From Octopus sinensis (lineage: Eukaryota): 64,000 nt of DNA. The notes below the pieces were generated by a model, which saw nothing but the letters and a program-made list of their open reading frames with translations, had not been told where the DNA came from and searched no databases. Made by a program: the position numbers and the translations under genes. Within the stretch, counting starts at the first letter, position 1; each line of letters starts with the position of its first letter. Below are positions 32,446-61,673 of the stretch, piece after piece. The DNA is taken from positions 61,752,001 through 61,816,000 of the forward strand of contig NC_043005.1 of the NCBI RefSeq assembly GCF_006345805.1. Direction: 5' to 3'.

Positions 32446-32586
32446 TTACCTTTTACGGTCCTTTCGGGATCCACGTTTTTTCGATTTACAAATACCTTTG
32501 GAATTTCGAATCATTTTCCTGGGACATTTTTTAATGCAGCTACTCTTGAATTTGACATTTAAACAGGAATGACATTGGTTTGCACC
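32446..32586 (-). CDS. EGFR: EGFR-like exon, probably terminal (GANQCHSCLNVKFKSSCIKKCPRKMIRNSKGICKSKKRGSRKDRKR*)
   Basis: Acceptor ctcattgtag|GGT follows a 130-bp intron. In-frame TAA at 32448-32446. A possible donor AG|gtaaaa overlaps the stop, so the terminal status is uncertain. Confidence 0.8.
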   Translation of the reverse strand, partial: GANQCHSCLNVKFKSSCIKKCPRKMIRNSKGICKSKKRGSRKDRKR

Positions 32587-59500: not shown

Positions 59501-61673
59501 ATTCTTAATCAATCTATTCAATTCATAGAAACCAACATGAACACTGAGGTGAGGCAACAAACCGGATTTTATGCCTATTCTCGCTTGAAGTCAGGAATGT
59601 TGGATAATGACTAAAAGGGTACAATCATGAATATGAGTAGCCCAAATAGGGTTTCTTTGAAGGATCTCTAGGGTAACATTACTCAACAAGGTGTGTAGCT
59701 TGAAGATCAGGTAGTCTTTCCAGGTTGAGCCACTACTTCTCCACATAAAGAGGTCACAGCTGTGGTACTATGGACATGTGATTAGAATGCCACAGGAAAG
59801 AATGGCAAGACAAATTCCTCAAACCATGCCAACTAGCAGAAACCCTAGGGGTACACTAAGAATGGGATGGTTGGATAATATCCATAATCTCAGTTGGTCA
59901 TGCTTGGGAGTCCAACCAGAAAGTCTAATGATGATTGTTTCTGAGAGGATCCTATGGCAGAGGTACCTGAGGACCTTCTACTGCAATGATTCACACAGGA
60001 GTAGTGGACAGAAAAGATGGATGGAAGAATGGATGGTGAAGTGATAACAAAGTCATGACATGGCTGTGTGGTTGTGAAGTTTACTTTACAACTTCATTGT
60101 TTCAGGTTTGATCCCACTATGTGCAACATGCACCATTGCCTCTACATTGACCAAAGCTTTTCAAATGAAATTTAGCAAATGTAAACCTATCTTCAGAGGT
60201 AAAACTTAAATTGCCATGAGGTTTAAGACCATCACTTGACCCTTTAGTGGACTTTATGGAGGTGCAAGCATTCAAGTTAGGTCTCCAGGTTGAGGATAAA
60301 CTCTCCCTTCCTTTCATCAGTCTTAGGAGCTCTGTAAAGAGGCGTGTACACTACTCCCTGTCCTCTGACTATGCAATGAAGAAAAAGAAAACAATAATTT
60401 GATTCTGAATGTCAAACATTCATTCATTCACCAGGACACGAAGTCACTCCAACTGGAGGAACCCTTCTCTTGACTGTGCTTACCACCATCTGTTTCATGC
60501 TCAAATTTATTTCAAGGATTTACTTTACTCACCAAGCTAGGCCTATTGGTTGGTGAAGATGATTTTCAGGCACTTAGGTGGAATTTGACTCAGAACACAG
60601 AGAAGTGGAATAAAATACCACAAGGCATCAGAGCTGAGATTCTTACAGTTTTACCAATCCACCACCCTGCCACTCTGAATTCATACTTGATTTATAAACT
60701 CCAAAAGTGTGAAAGGCAAAGTTTAGATCAGCAGGATTTAATCAAAGAACACAAAGAACTAGAACAAATACCACAAGATATTGTATCCAATATTCTTATG
60801 ACCCAGATATTTCAACATATGATTAAACAAGGTTTTTGCATTATTAAAAAAGTTTTCAAACGCTAAACGCTATTGTTATAATAAAACCACTTAGATTTCT
60901 ATACATCAGCTAATGTTCAGTGGAATATTATTTTCCAAGGACATAATGCAATACTCCTCACGGTTTGTGACTTCATACAATTAACCACTCAAAATGTTGT
61001 TTTTTAATTTTATTGCAAAGAATGCTAAAAAATATTTGTTTTGAAATTTGACATTTAAATAAATTTCAGTGTCGTACTTCTCTAGCAAGGGATTTGATCT
61101 GATACTGAGTGTTGAAAGTGAAGCGACTACACCGTGCAAGAGCTATTTAACCTTTTAGCCTTTAACCTGGCCATATCCAGCCAAGATATTTCATCTGTTT
61201 TACATTCAAACTGACCAAATCTGGCCACTCACACCAACCTTACAATATAATCCTAAAAATTAATGGTTACCTCATCGAAATTTCAAAACTACAAGATAAA
61301 TGTAAGATTAATAAATAGACATTACTTTTGACAGGATAATGCAAATGCTAAATGGTTAATAACATACAAAGTTGTTAAGTTCAAAGTTACAGGTATACAG
61401 ATGTGTAATGAAAATTTCAACAACATACGAAATAAATTTAAAGTGAATAAAGAGTTTTGTGTGTTCTTAATTGACTCTTCCATGATGTTAATACCATTTA
61501 AGCAATATTACATGAAAAATGTTTTTGTCATTACCTGGACATTCTCTAAGACAGATATCCTGAAAGGTTAACTTATTCTGGTCACCTGAATGGATTCTCA
61601 TTCTTTTGCGGTTGCTCCGAATAGATGGACAGTTCTCTACACATGCACCATCATCATTCATATGTCTACAGGC
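32446..61673 (-). CDS. EGFR: EGFR/ErbB-like ectodomain gene, partial model of 7 exons (61673-61535, 59133-59017, 58122-58017, 52056-51895, 49930-49728, 32925-32717, 32586-32446); 358 aa; divergent paralogue; 5' end not in window
   Basis: All six introns are GT-AG and phases match (1,1,2,2,1,0). The joined translation is collinear with EGFR domains II-III-IV, with motifs CVENCP, HAGNID..KDC, GDRYYNVPPM, LRNLKIING, NLCYANT, TGQVC, GCWGP and CHEECSGGCSGP. Orthology to canonical EGFR is not established. Confidence 0.9.
32717..32925 (-). CDS. EGFR: EGFR-like exon, furin-like domain IV (LNTGQVCDYQC...GCWGPDAEDC...CHEECSGGCSGP)
   Basis: Acceptor tatacag|TT, donor CCT|gtaagt, 209 bp. Domain IV Cys pattern. 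Confidence 0.93.
33854..34073. mobile_element. piggyBac-type MITE, 220 bp, TTAA target duplication
   Basis: TTAA-CCCTTTCG ... CGAAAGGG-TTAA; an inverted copy lies at 61753-61973. Confidence 0.85.
35125..35390. repeat. MITE-like inverted repeat with arms of about 70 bp
   Basis: agggcaccggagggccaacgccaata... is mirrored by ...tattggtgttgaccctccagcaccct. Confidence 0.65.
35440..35590. repeat. (GATA)n microsatellite
   Basis: Read directly from the sequence. (AT)n, (CA)n, (AAT)n and (GAT)n tracts occur throughout the window. Confidence 0.98.
36450..40876 (+). mobile_element. Near full-length degenerate Penelope-like retroelement (RT + GIY-YIG) between direct repeats of about 500 bp, antisense inside the EGFR-like intron
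   Basis: N-terminus FSSKEIPIP...SFIRRMRWKVFF; RT FDITMGS...GLYRDD...VNFLDATFNL...SSHPPSI; Cys linker CTCCRKCTCPLVNQC; endonuclease IVYKCTI...YKGASENQFK...CNLCLEE. Direct repeats at 36450-36965 and 40373-40876. A SINE is inserted at 38290-38700. Confidence 0.92.
40918..41125 (-). mobile_element. Dispersed Penelope-terminus-like element with hammerhead motif. Copies at 51290-51500(-), 63688-63890(-); partial copies 19165-19270(+), 23718-23815(-)
   Basis: Shared ends 'tagttaatccaaac.ag' and 'cgccaacg.tacacacg.ggtcacat'. Confidence 0.75.
41018..41052 (-). ncRNA. Minimal type I hammerhead motif with CCGACGA core variant
   Basis: GTTT-CCGACGA-A-GAG-CTCCA-CTC-GAAAC-GTT-AAAC on the minus strand. 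Stem I is GTTT/AAAC, stem II is GAG/CTC, and stem III is the palindrome ACGT. Sister copies read CTGAAGA and CTGATAA at the core. Confidence 0.65.
42547..43728 (-). mobile_element. hAT (Charlie/Buster-like) relic interrupted by an RTE 3' fragment (42820-43440)
   Basis: Minus strand EEAIKKLLLFTTTHLCKQ*LSTLMIIKTKQSN*LDPED (hAT dimerisation domain); termini caggggtcgggga / ttcgccaacctctg. Confidence 0.65.
44630..44990 (-). mobile_element. RTE LINE 3' tail; close copy at 63460-63635
   Basis: (CAT)n-gtttaacatccgttttccatgctagcatgggttg... shared with the other RTE tails. Confidence 0.75.
46902..47254. repeat. Three abutting palindromes (46902-46986, 46987-47096, 47097-47254)
   Basis: The third has 79-bp arms, no spacer and one mismatch (centre 47175/47176). 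The first and third share ctttattta..gcagcagaaa ends. Confidence 0.95.
47184..47221 (+). ncRNA. Minimal type I hammerhead motif with CCGATGA core; mirror copy on the minus strand
   Basis: CTGT-CCGATGA-acggcaatgg-GAAAC-TCAGA-GTA-ACAG. Stem I is CTGT/ACAG; stem II is weak. Confidence 0.55.
47267..47798. mobile_element. Inverted-repeat element with arms of about 170 bp, each arm carrying a degenerate outward-facing hammerhead
   Basis: Right arm GGAGT-CTGACAA-(ataaag..ctttat stem)-ggatgc-AAAAC-gattg-GTC-ACTCT; the left arm on the minus strand retains GAAAC and ACTCC. Confidence 0.7.
48540..49375 (+). mobile_element. RTE-clade LINE 3' fragment
   Basis: Degenerate C-terminus LSWY..MDGDSSVKKC*SLTVEGICGIGKPMKT*DKAVKHD, then the tail ending in (GAT)n. 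Confidence 0.75.
49728..49930 (-). CDS. EGFR: EGFR-like exon, L2 C-terminal half (NGYALAVV...NPNLCYANTM...DNKDRIAC)
   Basis: Acceptor ttttatttag|A, donor TGTC|gtaagt, 203 bp. Resembles human EGFR exon 12 (YSLAVV...NKNLCYANTINW). Confidence 0.93.
50390..51212 (-). mobile_element. 5' part of the same mariner family as 4229-5252, interrupted by a SINE
   Basis: TIR ..ttatgggatgacccaata at about 51190-51212; internal sequence matches 4840-5230. Confidence 0.8.
51895..52056 (-). CDS. EGFR: EGFR-like exon, L2 domain (GDRYYNVPPMSPSKLDILMSIEEITHFLYISDTVPTITSLRMLRNLKIINGQKT)
   Basis: Acceptor cactttcag|G, donor CT|gtgagt, 162 bp, phase 2-2. Confidence 0.92.
52241..52646 (+). mobile_element. Non-autonomous Helitron-like element, copy 2
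   Basis: a|TCtctc...tactgCTAG|t: 5' TC, 3' CTAG and insertion between A and T, all Helitron hallmarks. Confidence 0.8.
52750..53280 (+). mobile_element. RTE-clade LINE 3' fragment
   Basis: GRGRPRKT*DEVLKNDLKMM remnant, plus the conserved tail and (GAT)n. Confidence 0.7.
54616..55250 (-). mobile_element. Mariner 3' half, frameshifted
   Basis: IVIGDEKWIIY...GLHPKEVLLCVWWD...VVFQHDNARLH...HLPYSPDIAPSDFHLFRSLQNSL; TIR-like end at 54616. Confidence 0.9.
56575..56780 (-). mobile_element. CR1-type LINE 3' end with (TTA)n tail
   Basis: Minus strand RKHFFTLRVAEAWNKLPASVVDCHDTASFK, typical of the CR1 ORF2 C-terminus. Confidence 0.8.
57322..57603 (-). mobile_element. Candidate solo LTR, 282 bp
   Basis: TGTTGTA...TACAACA inverted termini and an internal TATAAATA on the minus strand; no target duplication visible. 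Confidence 0.45.
58017..58122 (-). CDS. EGFR: EGFR-like exon, start of L2 domain (ECVFEEDFVHAGNIDMLKDCVVVRGHIAIVEATFKG)
   Basis: Acceptor ttttcacag|AA, donor AAGG|gtaagt, 106 bp. HAGNID..C motif as in invertebrate EGFR. Confidence 0.9.
58668..58833. repeat. Short inverted-repeat element with hammerhead remnant
   Basis: Arms tacagaatggagtaggtaagatctgg / ccagatcttacctactccattcttgta; right side GCC-AAG-GGT-GAAAC-ATAT-GTA-GCCC; the CTGANGA core is not intact. Confidence 0.65.
59017..59133 (-). CDS. EGFR: EGFR-like exon, end of domain II (AYTSRYGDTCVLSCPEGTSSVKTDQYSTNICEPCKKCPK)
   Basis: Acceptor gttttacag|CT, donor AAAG|gtaacc, 117 bp, phase 1-1. Not in the ORF track; found by reading the minus strand. 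Confidence 0.88.
59630..60010 (+). mobile_element. RTE-type LINE C-terminal relic
   Basis: EPLLLHIKRSQLWYYGHVIRMPQERMARQI...PRGTLRMGWLDNI. Confidence 0.75.
61150..61358. mobile_element. TTAA-flanked MITE; related copies near 2100-2255 and 22272-22480
   Basis: TTAA-CC...GG-TTAA termini; shared 'ctggccatatccag...cattcaaactg' body. Confidence 0.55.
61535..61673 (-). CDS. EGFR: EGFR-like exon, furin-like domain II (ACRHMNDDGACVENCPSIRSNRKRMRIHSGDQNKLTFQDICLRECP)
   Basis: Acceptor ttttttcag|GCC, donor CCAG|gtaat, 139 bp. Cys spacing matches human EGFR exon 7. Confidence 0.9.

What the first reader, a model, noticed from the sequence alone, without database searches (positions are those of the whole stretch)
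32446..61673. EGFR-like gene that appears to stop after domain IV with a polybasic tail: candidate secreted decoy receptor
Seen: the last exon stays EGFR-like through ...CIKKCPRKMIRNSKGIC, then reads KSKKRGSRKDRKR* in place of the next CHxxC module. I found no transmembrane or kinase exon in the following 32 kb. Established: in human EGFR domain IV the equivalent Cys (KTC...HVC) form a disulfide pair, so this chain would end just after a complete module with no free Cys. Soluble ectodomain forms exist for vertebrate EGFR/ErbB, and Drosophila SDR is a secreted decoy of the related insulin receptor. Inference: a dedicated secreted, matrix- or heparan-binding EGF ligand trap in a cephalopod.
Basis: partly seen in the sequence, partly recalled or inferred. 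Interest (0 to 1): 0.8.

Follow-up and report, generated by a model that had tools for sequence, protein, structure and literature searches.

The report
Kinase-less secreted EGFR paralogue of cephalopods
The window holds seven exons of an octopus gene for a secreted copy of the EGF receptor's outer part, with no membrane anchor or kinase and a strongly basic tail; the gene is kept in octopuses, the paper nautilus and cuttlefish alongside normal EGF receptors, so it is probably an extracellular binder of EGF-type growth factors, although no one has tested this.

Summary
The exons are real. Seven minus-strand exons (61673-32450) splice to residues 266-622 of Octopus sinensis XP_029640805.1 (642 aa), 357 of 357 identical. 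No kinase exon lies in the window.

TAA 32448-32446 sits inside the donor AAAAG|GTAAAAGG. Models from four octopods, Sepia esculenta mRNAs and the Argonauta genome all splice there to one more small exon (KLSPRKKKKRTSKKIHRLH*). In this species that exon lies more than 32 kb downstream, outside the window.

The main reading holds:
- The protein has a signal peptide, L1-CR1-L2 and a truncated domain IV, and a disordered tail of about 32 residues. It has no TM segment and no kinase.
- It is a separate gene. Octopods also carry two full-length EGFR paralogues, only about 40% identical to it.
- It is conserved more tightly than those receptors: 93% Octopus-Argonauta against 70-80%, and dN/dS 0.03.
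- The dimerisation arm is degenerate, while the ligand-contact Asp355 is kept.

A heparan-retained ligand trap is the best inference but is untested. The protein is mislabelled "erbB-4" in databases, and the searched literature does not describe it.

The parts
61535..61673 (-). Exon, aa 266-311 (end of CR1/domain II). It includes the degenerate, polybasic dimerisation-arm loop CPSIRSNRKRMRIHSGDQNKLTFQDIC.
   Evidence: Acceptor ttttcag|GCC, donor CCAG|gtaatg. Exact match to P0077. Arm comparison.
59017..59133 (-). Exon, aa 312-350 (last modules of CR1).
58017..58122 (-). Exon, aa 351-386 (start of L2/domain III).
   Evidence: tblastn 100% to P0070/P0077. Borders cacag|AATG and AAGG|gtaagt.
51895..52056 (-). 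Exon, aa 387-440 (L2). It carries the KGD motif equivalent to human Asp355.
49728..49930 (-). Exon, aa 441-507 (L2). It carries the family-specific Cys450.
32717..32925 (-). Exon, aa 508-577 (domain IV, first modules). It follows a 16.8-kb intron.
32450..32586 (-). Penultimate coding exon, aa 578-622 plus two bases of codon 623. It holds the last domain IV module (Cys571-Cys593 equivalent) and the first 12 residues of the polybasic tail (KSKKRGSRKDRK).
   Evidence: Orthologous exon in Argonauta at L010 44402-44538.
32441..32449 (-). Splice donor AG|GTAAAAGGC.
   Evidence: Proteins and cDNAs read through this junction into further tail residues. Argonauta has the same AG|GTAA donor. There is no AATAAA or ATTAAA within 1.2 kb downstream.
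1..32449 (-). Part of the last intron (more than 32.4 kb, runs off the window). It is repeat-rich and has no tail exon and no kinase exon.
   Evidence: Gene span 127 kb in GCA_006345805.1.

Best explanation
The window contains the middle and 3' part of a coleoid-cephalopod gene that arose by duplication of a molluscan EGFR gene.

What it encodes:
- It now encodes only a secreted ectodomain: signal peptide, L1, CR1, L2, and domain IV cut after the Cys571-Cys593-equivalent disulfide.
- A disordered tail of about 32 residues follows, 20 of them Lys/Arg. The tail is split between the exon at 32586-32450 and one small terminal exon beyond the window.

What is shown:
- Gene structure and the splice at 32450/32449.
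- Absence of a TM segment and a kinase.
- Separate full-length EGFR genes in the same genomes.
- Expression as a complete polyadenylation-signal-bearing mRNA in cuttlefish larvae.
- Strong purifying selection on both the ectodomain and the tail.
- An EGFR-ectodomain fold.

What is inferred:
- The protein is secreted and held on heparan sulfate or other polyanions by its tail.
- There it binds EGF-family ligands through the retained domain I and III surfaces.
- This would limit or shape ligand access to the two signalling EGFRs, so it acts as a ligand sink.
- It would not act as a heterodimerising dominant negative, because the dimerisation-arm Tyr246 and Tyr/Phe251 and several docking residues are replaced.
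For: Gene model
- Seven exons with AG/GT borders give 357/357 identity to XP_029640805.1.
- 642-aa orthologues exist in O. vulgaris, O. bimaculoides, O. sinensis and Argonauta hians.
- 647-648-aa orthologues exist on contiguous 2.4-2.6-kb RNA-seq contigs in 100 Logan blocks. Two of those runs are Sepia esculenta larvae.

C-terminus
- The tail continues across the junction in all species.
- The cDNA shows a stop, a 3'UTR of about 480 nt and an AATAAA hexamer.
- The Argonauta genome has the terminal exon 9.9 kb downstream. There is no kinase hit, and no hit to the TM-to-kinase segment of Argonauta EGFR, within 10 kb beyond it.

No TM or kinase
- Pfam finds only Recep_L, Furin-like and GF_recep_IV.
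- The only hydrophobic peak is the N-terminal signal sequence.
- No protein of 704-2240 aa in 5.8 billion carries this ectodomain. The best is 40% identical.

Separate receptors
- Full-length EGFRs of 1396-1408 aa exist in Octopus and Argonauta. They are 40% identical to this protein and collinear with it up to ...KKICQ|QCH.

Origin
- The family is one clade (100/100) on a long stem inside the molluscan EGFR clade (96/99). It is weakly sister to the cephalopod EGFRs (66/63).

Constraint
- Octopus-Argonauta identity is 93%, against 80% and 70% for the two EGFR ectodomains.
- dN/dS is 0.026 for the whole ORF and 0.09 for the tail.

Fold
- AF2 mean pLDDT is 87, and the tail 613-642 is low-confidence.
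- TM-score is 0.74-0.87 to extended ErbB4, EGFR and Drosophila EGFR ectodomains. The PDB sequence search gives E 1e-102.

Functional residues
- Asp355, Glu90 and the hydrophobic site-1 and site-2 positions are retained.
- Tyr246 becomes Ser/Asn, Tyr/Phe251 becomes Met/Pro and Arg/Lys285 becomes Leu. Phe230, Pro204 and Asp279 are also replaced, although they are conserved in nearly all of the 14 full-length receptors compared.
Against: - There are no binding, localisation or loss-of-function data for any species.
- Gln384, kept in 13 of the 14 full-length EGFRs compared, is Ser here, and several site-3 residues differ. The ligand could therefore be different, or binding could be weak.
- Expression in Octopus itself rests on gene models only. 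No exact-match octopus transcript contig was found.
- Heparan binding is argued from composition alone.
- Three family-specific Cys give an odd Cys count whose pairing is unknown.
- The sister relation to cephalopod EGFRs is weakly supported, so the age of the duplication is uncertain.
Confidence: 0.6

Rival explanations
1. It is only a short isoform of a normal EGFR gene. The TM and kinase exons lie further downstream, and the 642-aa product is a minor alternative 3' end, as with the vertebrate sEGFR and sErbB3 isoforms.
For: The last intron leaves the window, so the DNA beyond it was not seen for O. sinensis. Vertebrate soluble ErbB forms arise this way (established knowledge).
Against: - No protein of 704-2240 aa with this ectodomain exists in the database.
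- All models in four species are 642 aa, with no isoform label on the RefSeq entries.
- Cuttlefish mRNAs end with a stop and a 3'UTR.
- In Argonauta the terminal exon is followed by 10 kb with no kinase hit and no hit to the EGFR TM-to-kinase segment.
- The full-length EGFRs have their own ectodomains, only 40% identical.
Confidence: 0.03
2. It is a secreted EGFR-like protein that does not trap ligand. It could modulate the receptors directly by binding them, present ligand as an agonist co-factor, or bind a non-EGF partner or matrix component through its basic arm and tail.
For: - Gln384 is replaced by Ser and site 3 is changed.
- The long stem branch (1.36 substitutions per site) suggests a change of function after duplication.
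- The dimer arm has been rebuilt into a conserved basic loop rather than simply decaying.
- Three new conserved Cys are present.
Against: - Asp355 and Glu90 pair with conserved ligand residues in the human complex. They are kept, as are the hydrophobic site-1 and site-2 positions.
- Heterodimerisation through the canonical arm is unlikely, because Tyr246 and Tyr251 and their docking residues are lost.
Confidence: 0.3
3. It is a decaying or non-functional duplicate: a truncated pseudogene that happens to be annotated.
For: It lacks the last two domain IV disulfides, the domain V-type Cys-rich region seen in invertebrate EGFRs, the TM segment and the kinase.
Against: - The ORF is intact in at least six species or lineages, and all 46 ancestral Cys are kept.
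- dN/dS is 0.026.
- It is more conserved than the real receptors.
- Full-length mRNAs occur in 100 RNA-seq assembly blocks.
Confidence: 0.01
4. One reading: read-through of the donor gives a 623-aa product ending KDRKR*, as the main form or as a regulated second form.
For: The TAA is in frame directly after the exon. It is also in frame in Argonauta.
Against: - An in-frame TAA is expected from any phase-2 AG|GTAA donor.
- No member of about 623 aa is in either protein cluster.
- There is no poly(A) hexamer within 1.2 kb downstream.
- The residues encoded by the terminal exon are conserved and under purifying selection.
Confidence: 0.06

Closest known systems
Full-length EGFR/ErbB receptors (human EGFR and ErbB4, Drosophila EGFR, oyster EGFR, the two octopod EGFR paralogues)
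   Same: - The L1-CR1-L2-CR2 ectodomain is collinear from the first Cys to the Cys571-Cys593 module. Identity is 33-40%, with 46 shared Cys.
- The predicted fold matches extended ectodomain structures.
- The phase-0 exon border before GANQC falls where I recall the human exon 14/15 border, before PDNC. This is from memory and was not tested.
   Different: - It has no TM segment, juxtamembrane region, kinase or C-tail. It also lacks the last two domain IV disulfides and the extra Cys-rich region of invertebrate EGFRs.
- The dimerisation arm and its docking residues are replaced.
- It adds a polybasic tail and three new Cys.
Vertebrate soluble ErbB isoforms (sEGFR p110/p60, p85-sErbB3, herstatin)
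   Same: These are ectodomain-only secreted products that can bind ligand or receptor and damp signalling (established knowledge).
   Different: Those arise from alternative splicing, polyadenylation or shedding of the receptor gene itself. Here a separate locus, old and strongly constrained, encodes only the soluble form.
Drosophila Secreted Decoy of InR (SDR)
   Same: A stand-alone gene derived from an L1-CR-L2-type RTK ectodomain. It is secreted and lacks a TM segment and a kinase.
   Different: SDR belongs to the insulin-receptor family and has a different ligand class. I know of no polybasic tail on it. It arose independently.
Drosophila Argos
   Same: It is a secreted antagonist that works by sequestering the EGF-family ligand Spitz, not by binding the receptor (established knowledge). 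This is the mechanism proposed here.
   Different: Argos is unrelated in sequence to EGFR. The cephalopod protein is a true receptor paralogue.
Basic C-terminal retention motifs of VEGF-A, PlGF-2 and PDGF long isoforms
   Same: A short, disordered, Lys/Arg-rich C-terminal stretch, partly on its own small exon, with Cardin-Weintraub-like BBBXXB patterns (sequence). In those factors the motif binds heparan sulfate and limits diffusion (established knowledge).
   Different: There is no sequence homology. Here the motif is attached to a receptor-type binding module and not to a ligand. Binding has not been tested.

Membership tests
ErbB/EGFR receptor tyrosine kinases (the name the databases give it: 'receptor tyrosine-protein kinase erbB-4') | Extracellular L1 - furin-like CR1 - L2 - domain IV architecture | tested here: met
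   Pfam Recep_L_domain x2 (E 8.5e-43), Furin-like (9e-33) and GF_recep_IV (7.9e-22, profile positions 1-107 of 132). PDB sequence hits reach E 1e-102. Foldseek TM-score 0.74-0.87.
ErbB/EGFR receptor tyrosine kinases | Single-pass transmembrane helix after domain IV | tested here: not met
   The only 19-residue hydropathy peak above 1.5 is the signal sequence, residues 4-22. Bivalve EGFRs scanned the same way show a clear TM peak.
ErbB/EGFR receptor tyrosine kinases | Cytoplasmic tyrosine kinase domain | tested here: not met
   No PF07714 or PF00069 hit in the protein. No kinase hit in the window or in the Argonauta locus plus 10 kb.
ErbB/EGFR receptor tyrosine kinases | Domain II dimerisation arm with conserved Tyr246 and Tyr/Phe251 plus docking residues | tested here: not met
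   All 14 full-length receptors aligned have Y at 246. All but two bivalve sequences (oyster M, scallop L) have Y or F at 251. The truncated family has S/N and M/P, a one-residue deletion, and changes at positions 204, 230, 279 and 285.
Soluble ErbB isoforms made from a receptor gene | Shares its ectodomain exons with a full-length receptor transcript of the same locus | tested here: not met
   No longer protein carries this ectodomain. The full-length EGFRs of the same species are only 40% identical.
Gene-encoded secreted RTK-ectodomain decoys (SDR type) | Separate gene, signal peptide, no membrane anchor, homologous to the ligand-binding region | tested here: met
   The signal peptide is inferred from hydropathy only.
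Gene-encoded secreted RTK-ectodomain decoys (SDR type) | Binds the receptor's ligands and antagonises signalling | not testable with these tools
   Only indirect evidence: Asp355, Glu90 and the hydrophobic contact positions are kept, and Gln384 is lost.
Heparan-sulfate retention tails | Disordered cluster of basic residues with BBXB / BBBXXB patterns | tested here: met
   20 Lys/Arg, 2 His and 1 acidic residue among the 32 residues after the last Cys (21 K/R/H counted). pLDDT is below 50-64 over 613-642. The tail is conserved Octopus-Sepia and has dN/dS 0.09.
Heparan-sulfate retention tails | Measured binding to heparin or heparan sulfate | not testable with these tools
   No data.

The most novel reading that the evidence does not exclude
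Coleoid cephalopods evolved, before the octopus-cuttlefish split, a dedicated receptor-derived antagonist or shaper of EGF-family signalling. It would be a secreted EGFR paralogue that has lost receptor-receptor dimerisation and gained a matrix-anchoring polybasic tail. It is now more constrained than the signalling receptors themselves. That would make it a functional counterpart of Drosophila Argos built from the receptor itself, and the first stand-alone EGFR-family decoy gene described in any animal, as far as the searched literature shows.
Probability: 0.4. Interest if true: 0.7.

Novelty: new variant of a known kind. Interest (0 to 1): 0.55.

Why it matters
Soluble EGFR-family ectodomains are known only as by-products of receptor genes. 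Dedicated extracellular EGF-ligand antagonists such as Argos are unrelated to the receptor. A stand-alone receptor-derived gene that is old, highly constrained and tailed with a likely matrix anchor would be a third solution to the same problem.

It would also be a natural experiment on which ectodomain features are needed for ligand capture and which for dimerisation.

It gives cephalopod developmental and neural biology a concrete candidate regulator of EGFR signalling.

It also corrects a database error. These proteins are named "receptor tyrosine-protein kinase erbB-4" but have no kinase.

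Tried and rejected
- Candidate donor G|gtattt at 32495: rejected. The following residues GICKSKKRG... are conserved, and the Sepia cDNA has GGGGTG at that place.
- Read-through to TAA: rejected as the main form.
- Search for the terminal exon in the window: negative three ways. Protein regex with up to 6 mismatches on both strands, a scan for K/R-rich open frames, and blastn with the Argonauta terminal exon and flanks.
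- Kinase search in the window and in the Argonauta locus: negative.
- Queries padded with X were used to get round the length filter of the word-based protein search. They worked, but identities are understated because of the Xs.
- P0087, the best full-length relative (40% identity, run ERR13301064), could not be assigned to a species.
- The runs carrying P0082 could not be assigned to a species either.
- The distance between this gene and the EGFR paralogues could not be measured.
- Conservation at ligand-contact positions within the family (12 of 16 invariant) is no higher than the background 77% identity, so it is uninformative.
- Literature searches for a cephalopod or lophotrochozoan soluble EGFR, and for the accession numbers, found nothing relevant.
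- The AF2 model is in the extended, untethered form. I do not treat the predicted conformation as evidence.

Full report
**What is in the window**

The finding lies on the minus strand. Stop-to-stop frames and tblastn with a human EGFR ectodomain (621/621 identical to PDB 4uv7/1ivo) locate EGFR-like exons.

With the annotated octopus protein as a guide, seven exons can be placed exactly:
- 61673-61535
- 59133-59017
- 58122-58017
- 52056-51895
- 49930-49728
- 32925-32717
- 32586-32450

All have AG acceptors and GT donors. Their spliced translation equals residues 266-622 of P0077 (XP_029640805.1, Octopus sinensis, 642 aa), 357 of 357. The introns measure 2401, 894, 5960, 1964, 16802 and 130 bp. 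One intron of this gene inside the window is therefore already 16.8 kb.

In GCA_006345805.1 the gene spans 127 kb, and no other gene is called within 10 kb on either side. The window begins inside the gene. The signal peptide, L1 and most of CR1 lie beyond position 64000.

**The observation**

No kinase-like sequence occurs anywhere in the window. The best tblastn E-value with a human EGFR juxtamembrane+kinase query is 5.6.

KKC...GIC aligns with human Cys571...Cys593 and with ...CIDKCPLNMFPNQKKIC of the octopus EGFR. The mature chain shares 46 Cys with human EGFR and lacks only Cys596, 600, 604 and 612. The chain therefore does leave the EGFR pattern right after a complete module.

**The stop codon is not the real end**

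The TAA is bases 2-4 of the donor AAAAG|GTAAAAGG. Any phase-2 donor of the form AG|GTAA reads AGG TAA in frame.

The 642-aa proteins of O. vulgaris, O. bimaculoides, O. sinensis and Argonauta hians continue ...KDRKR-KLSPRKKKKRTSKKIHRLH. The 647-648-aa orthologues from RNA-seq assemblies continue ...KDRKR-RLNPRNKKNRPNKKVRRTSRPPGKTN.

The RNA-seq contigs are contiguous 2.4-2.6-kb cDNAs. They carry the whole ORF, a stop, about 480 nt of 3'UTR and an AATAAA hexamer. They occur in 100 blocks of the Logan collection. Two of the runs are Sepia esculenta larval transcriptomes.

In the Argonauta hians genome (L010) the same gene spans 44.5 kb.
- Its penultimate exon ends ...CGG AAA AG|GTAAAT.
- The terminal exon (ttttcag|GAAACTTGGTCCACGAAAG...CATTAA) lies 9.9 kb further on.
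- Neither a human kinase query nor the TM-to-kinase segment of Argonauta EGFR hits the locus or the 10 kb beyond it.

In this window the terminal exon is absent. The last intron therefore exceeds 32.4 kb.

The alternative donor at 32495 is only the codons GGT ATT. Sepia has GGG GTG there. No poly(A) hexamer lies within 1.2 kb after the TAA. Neither protein cluster has a member of about 623 aa.

**What the protein is**

- Domains: Pfam finds two receptor L domains, the furin-like region and growth-factor-receptor domain IV (profile positions 1-107 of 132), and nothing else.
- Hydropathy: the only hydrophobic segment is at the N-terminus, residues 4-22. Bivalve EGFRs scanned the same way show their TM helix.
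- PDB sequence search: the best matches are the ErbB4, Drosophila EGFR, ErbB3 and EGFR ectodomains (E about 1e-102 to 1e-95), covering residues 31-612.
- Structure: an AlphaFold2 model has mean pLDDT 87. Confidence is low only at the signal-peptide junction, the tip of the domain II arm (289-294) and the tail (613-642). The model superposes on extended ErbB4, EGFR and Drosophila EGFR ectodomains at TM-score 0.74-0.87.
- Tail: the 32 residues after the last Cys contain 20 Lys/Arg, 2 His and one acidic residue.

**It is a separate gene, not an isoform**

A search restricted to proteins of 704-2240 aa found no protein with this ectodomain. The best was 40% identical. An exhaustive HMMER search of 1.84 billion cluster representatives likewise found nothing above 40% identity outside the protein's own cluster.

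Full-length EGFRs with a kinase exist in the same animals:
- O. bimaculoides, 1403 aa
- O. vulgaris, 1408 aa
- Argonauta hians, 1404 and 1396 aa

They form two paralogues, about 70% identical to each other. They are 40% identical to the truncated protein and collinear with it up to the truncation point. Their contigs have the same lengths as those carrying the truncated gene, which suggests the same chromosome. The distance could not be measured.

**Origin and constraint**

In a maximum-likelihood tree of 40 ectodomains:
- The truncated family is one clade (100/100) on a long stem of 1.36 substitutions per site.
- It sits inside the molluscan EGFR clade (96/99).
- With the long planarian branch removed, it is sister to the cephalopod EGFRs, but only at 66/63 support.

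Within the family, change is slow. Octopus-Argonauta identity is 93%, against 80% and 70% for the two receptor ectodomains over the same species pair. Octopus-Sepia identity is 77%. Between two decapodiform cDNAs, dN/dS is 0.026 for the ORF and 0.09 for the 40 tail codons.

This is a functional gene that predates the octopus-cuttlefish split.

**How it probably works**

Positions homologous to the human ligand contacts are largely kept or conservatively changed:
- Asp355 is kept as Asp.
- Glu90 is kept as Glu.
- Leu14 is Met, Tyr45 is Phe/Tyr and Leu98 is Ile.
- Phe357 is Tyr.
- Phe412 is Tyr and Ile438 is Met.
- Gln384, otherwise almost invariant, is Ser.

The dimerisation arm is not kept. 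Tyr246 is invariant in the 14 full-length receptors aligned, and Tyr/Phe251 is kept in all but two bivalves. Here they become Ser/Asn and Met/Pro, with a one-residue deletion. The loop has turned basic (RSNRKRMRIH in Octopus, RSNRRRPKDQ in Sepia). Docking positions 204, 230, 279 and 285 are also replaced.

The most economical reading is a secreted binder of EGF-family ligands, held near cells or matrix by a heparan-binding tail. It would act as a sink or gradient shaper and not by pairing with the receptors.

This last step is inference. Nothing here measures secretion, heparin binding or ligand binding.

**Comparison with known systems**

- By architecture it is an EGFR-family ectodomain. It fails three defining features of a receptor tyrosine kinase: TM helix, kinase and dimer arm. 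The database names ("erbB-4", "receptor protein-tyrosine kinase") are therefore misleading.
- It differs from vertebrate sEGFR and sErbB3 in being a locus of its own.
- In logic it resembles Drosophila SDR (an insulin-receptor-derived secreted decoy) and Argos (a ligand-sequestering EGFR antagonist).
- Its tail resembles the basic retention motifs of the long VEGF and PDGF isoforms.
- Kinase-less EGFR-like predictions also turn up in amphioxus and a hemichordate. None shows this tail, and none was examined further.
- No paper in the searchable library mentions the cephalopod protein.

**Verdict**

The exons and the absence of kinase exons are right, and the protein has no TM segment, but the stop codon is wrong.

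It remains unproven at the level of function.

It is a new variant of a known kind, of moderate interest.

Noticed in passing
protein residues 126, 129 (outside the window) and 450 (window about 49903-49901, minus strand): The family has three Cys with no counterpart in human or octopus EGFR (FCSLC in L1, VVFCKG in L2). They are conserved between Octopus and Sepia. They give the mature chain an odd total of 49 Cys, so at least one is unpaired or forms an intermolecular bond.
   Followed up: partly
window 61622-61593 (minus strand), protein residues 283-292: The rebuilt dimerisation-arm loop is polybasic and contains a conserved R-S-N-R (a minimal furin-type motif) in Octopus, Argonauta (RNNR) and Sepia. 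Model confidence at the arm tip is below 50. Whether the loop is cleaved, or is a second polyanion-binding patch, is unknown.
   Followed up: no
not in the window; proteins P0297-P0300: Octopods have two full-length EGFR paralogues, about 70% identical in the ectodomain. Each has an Argonauta orthologue. Three of the four sit on contigs of the same length as those carrying the truncated gene (P0299 is on a separate 5-Mb Argonauta contig), which suggests a linked EGFR gene cluster.
   Followed up: partly
window 27106-27924 (+) and 54931-55302 (-): Mariner/Mos1-type transposase remnants lie inside introns. The first is a 272-aa ORF with HTH_48 and Transposase_1 (E 3e-25). The second is a fragment with Transposase_1 (E 7e-22).
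   Followed up: yes
window about 11703-11789, 16418-16499, 33262-33355, 38401-38468, 50823-50907, 58477-58562: A dispersed repeat of about 85 bp (SINE-like), often followed by microsatellite. It is 76-91% identical to copies in the introns and flank of the Argonauta orthologue. The introns are also full of (TA)n, (CA)n and ATATAC-type microsatellites, which produce long spurious IYIY/CVCV open frames.
   Followed up: no
proteins P0086 (amphioxus, 832 aa), P0094 (Glandiceps, 696 aa), P0073 and P0074 (Logan, 586 and 361 aa): Other animals have predicted EGFR-like proteins with no kinase. Some have a C-terminal hydrophobic stretch that could be a TM or GPI signal. None has a polybasic tail. Whether they are real genes, isoforms or truncated models was not examined.
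   Followed up: partly
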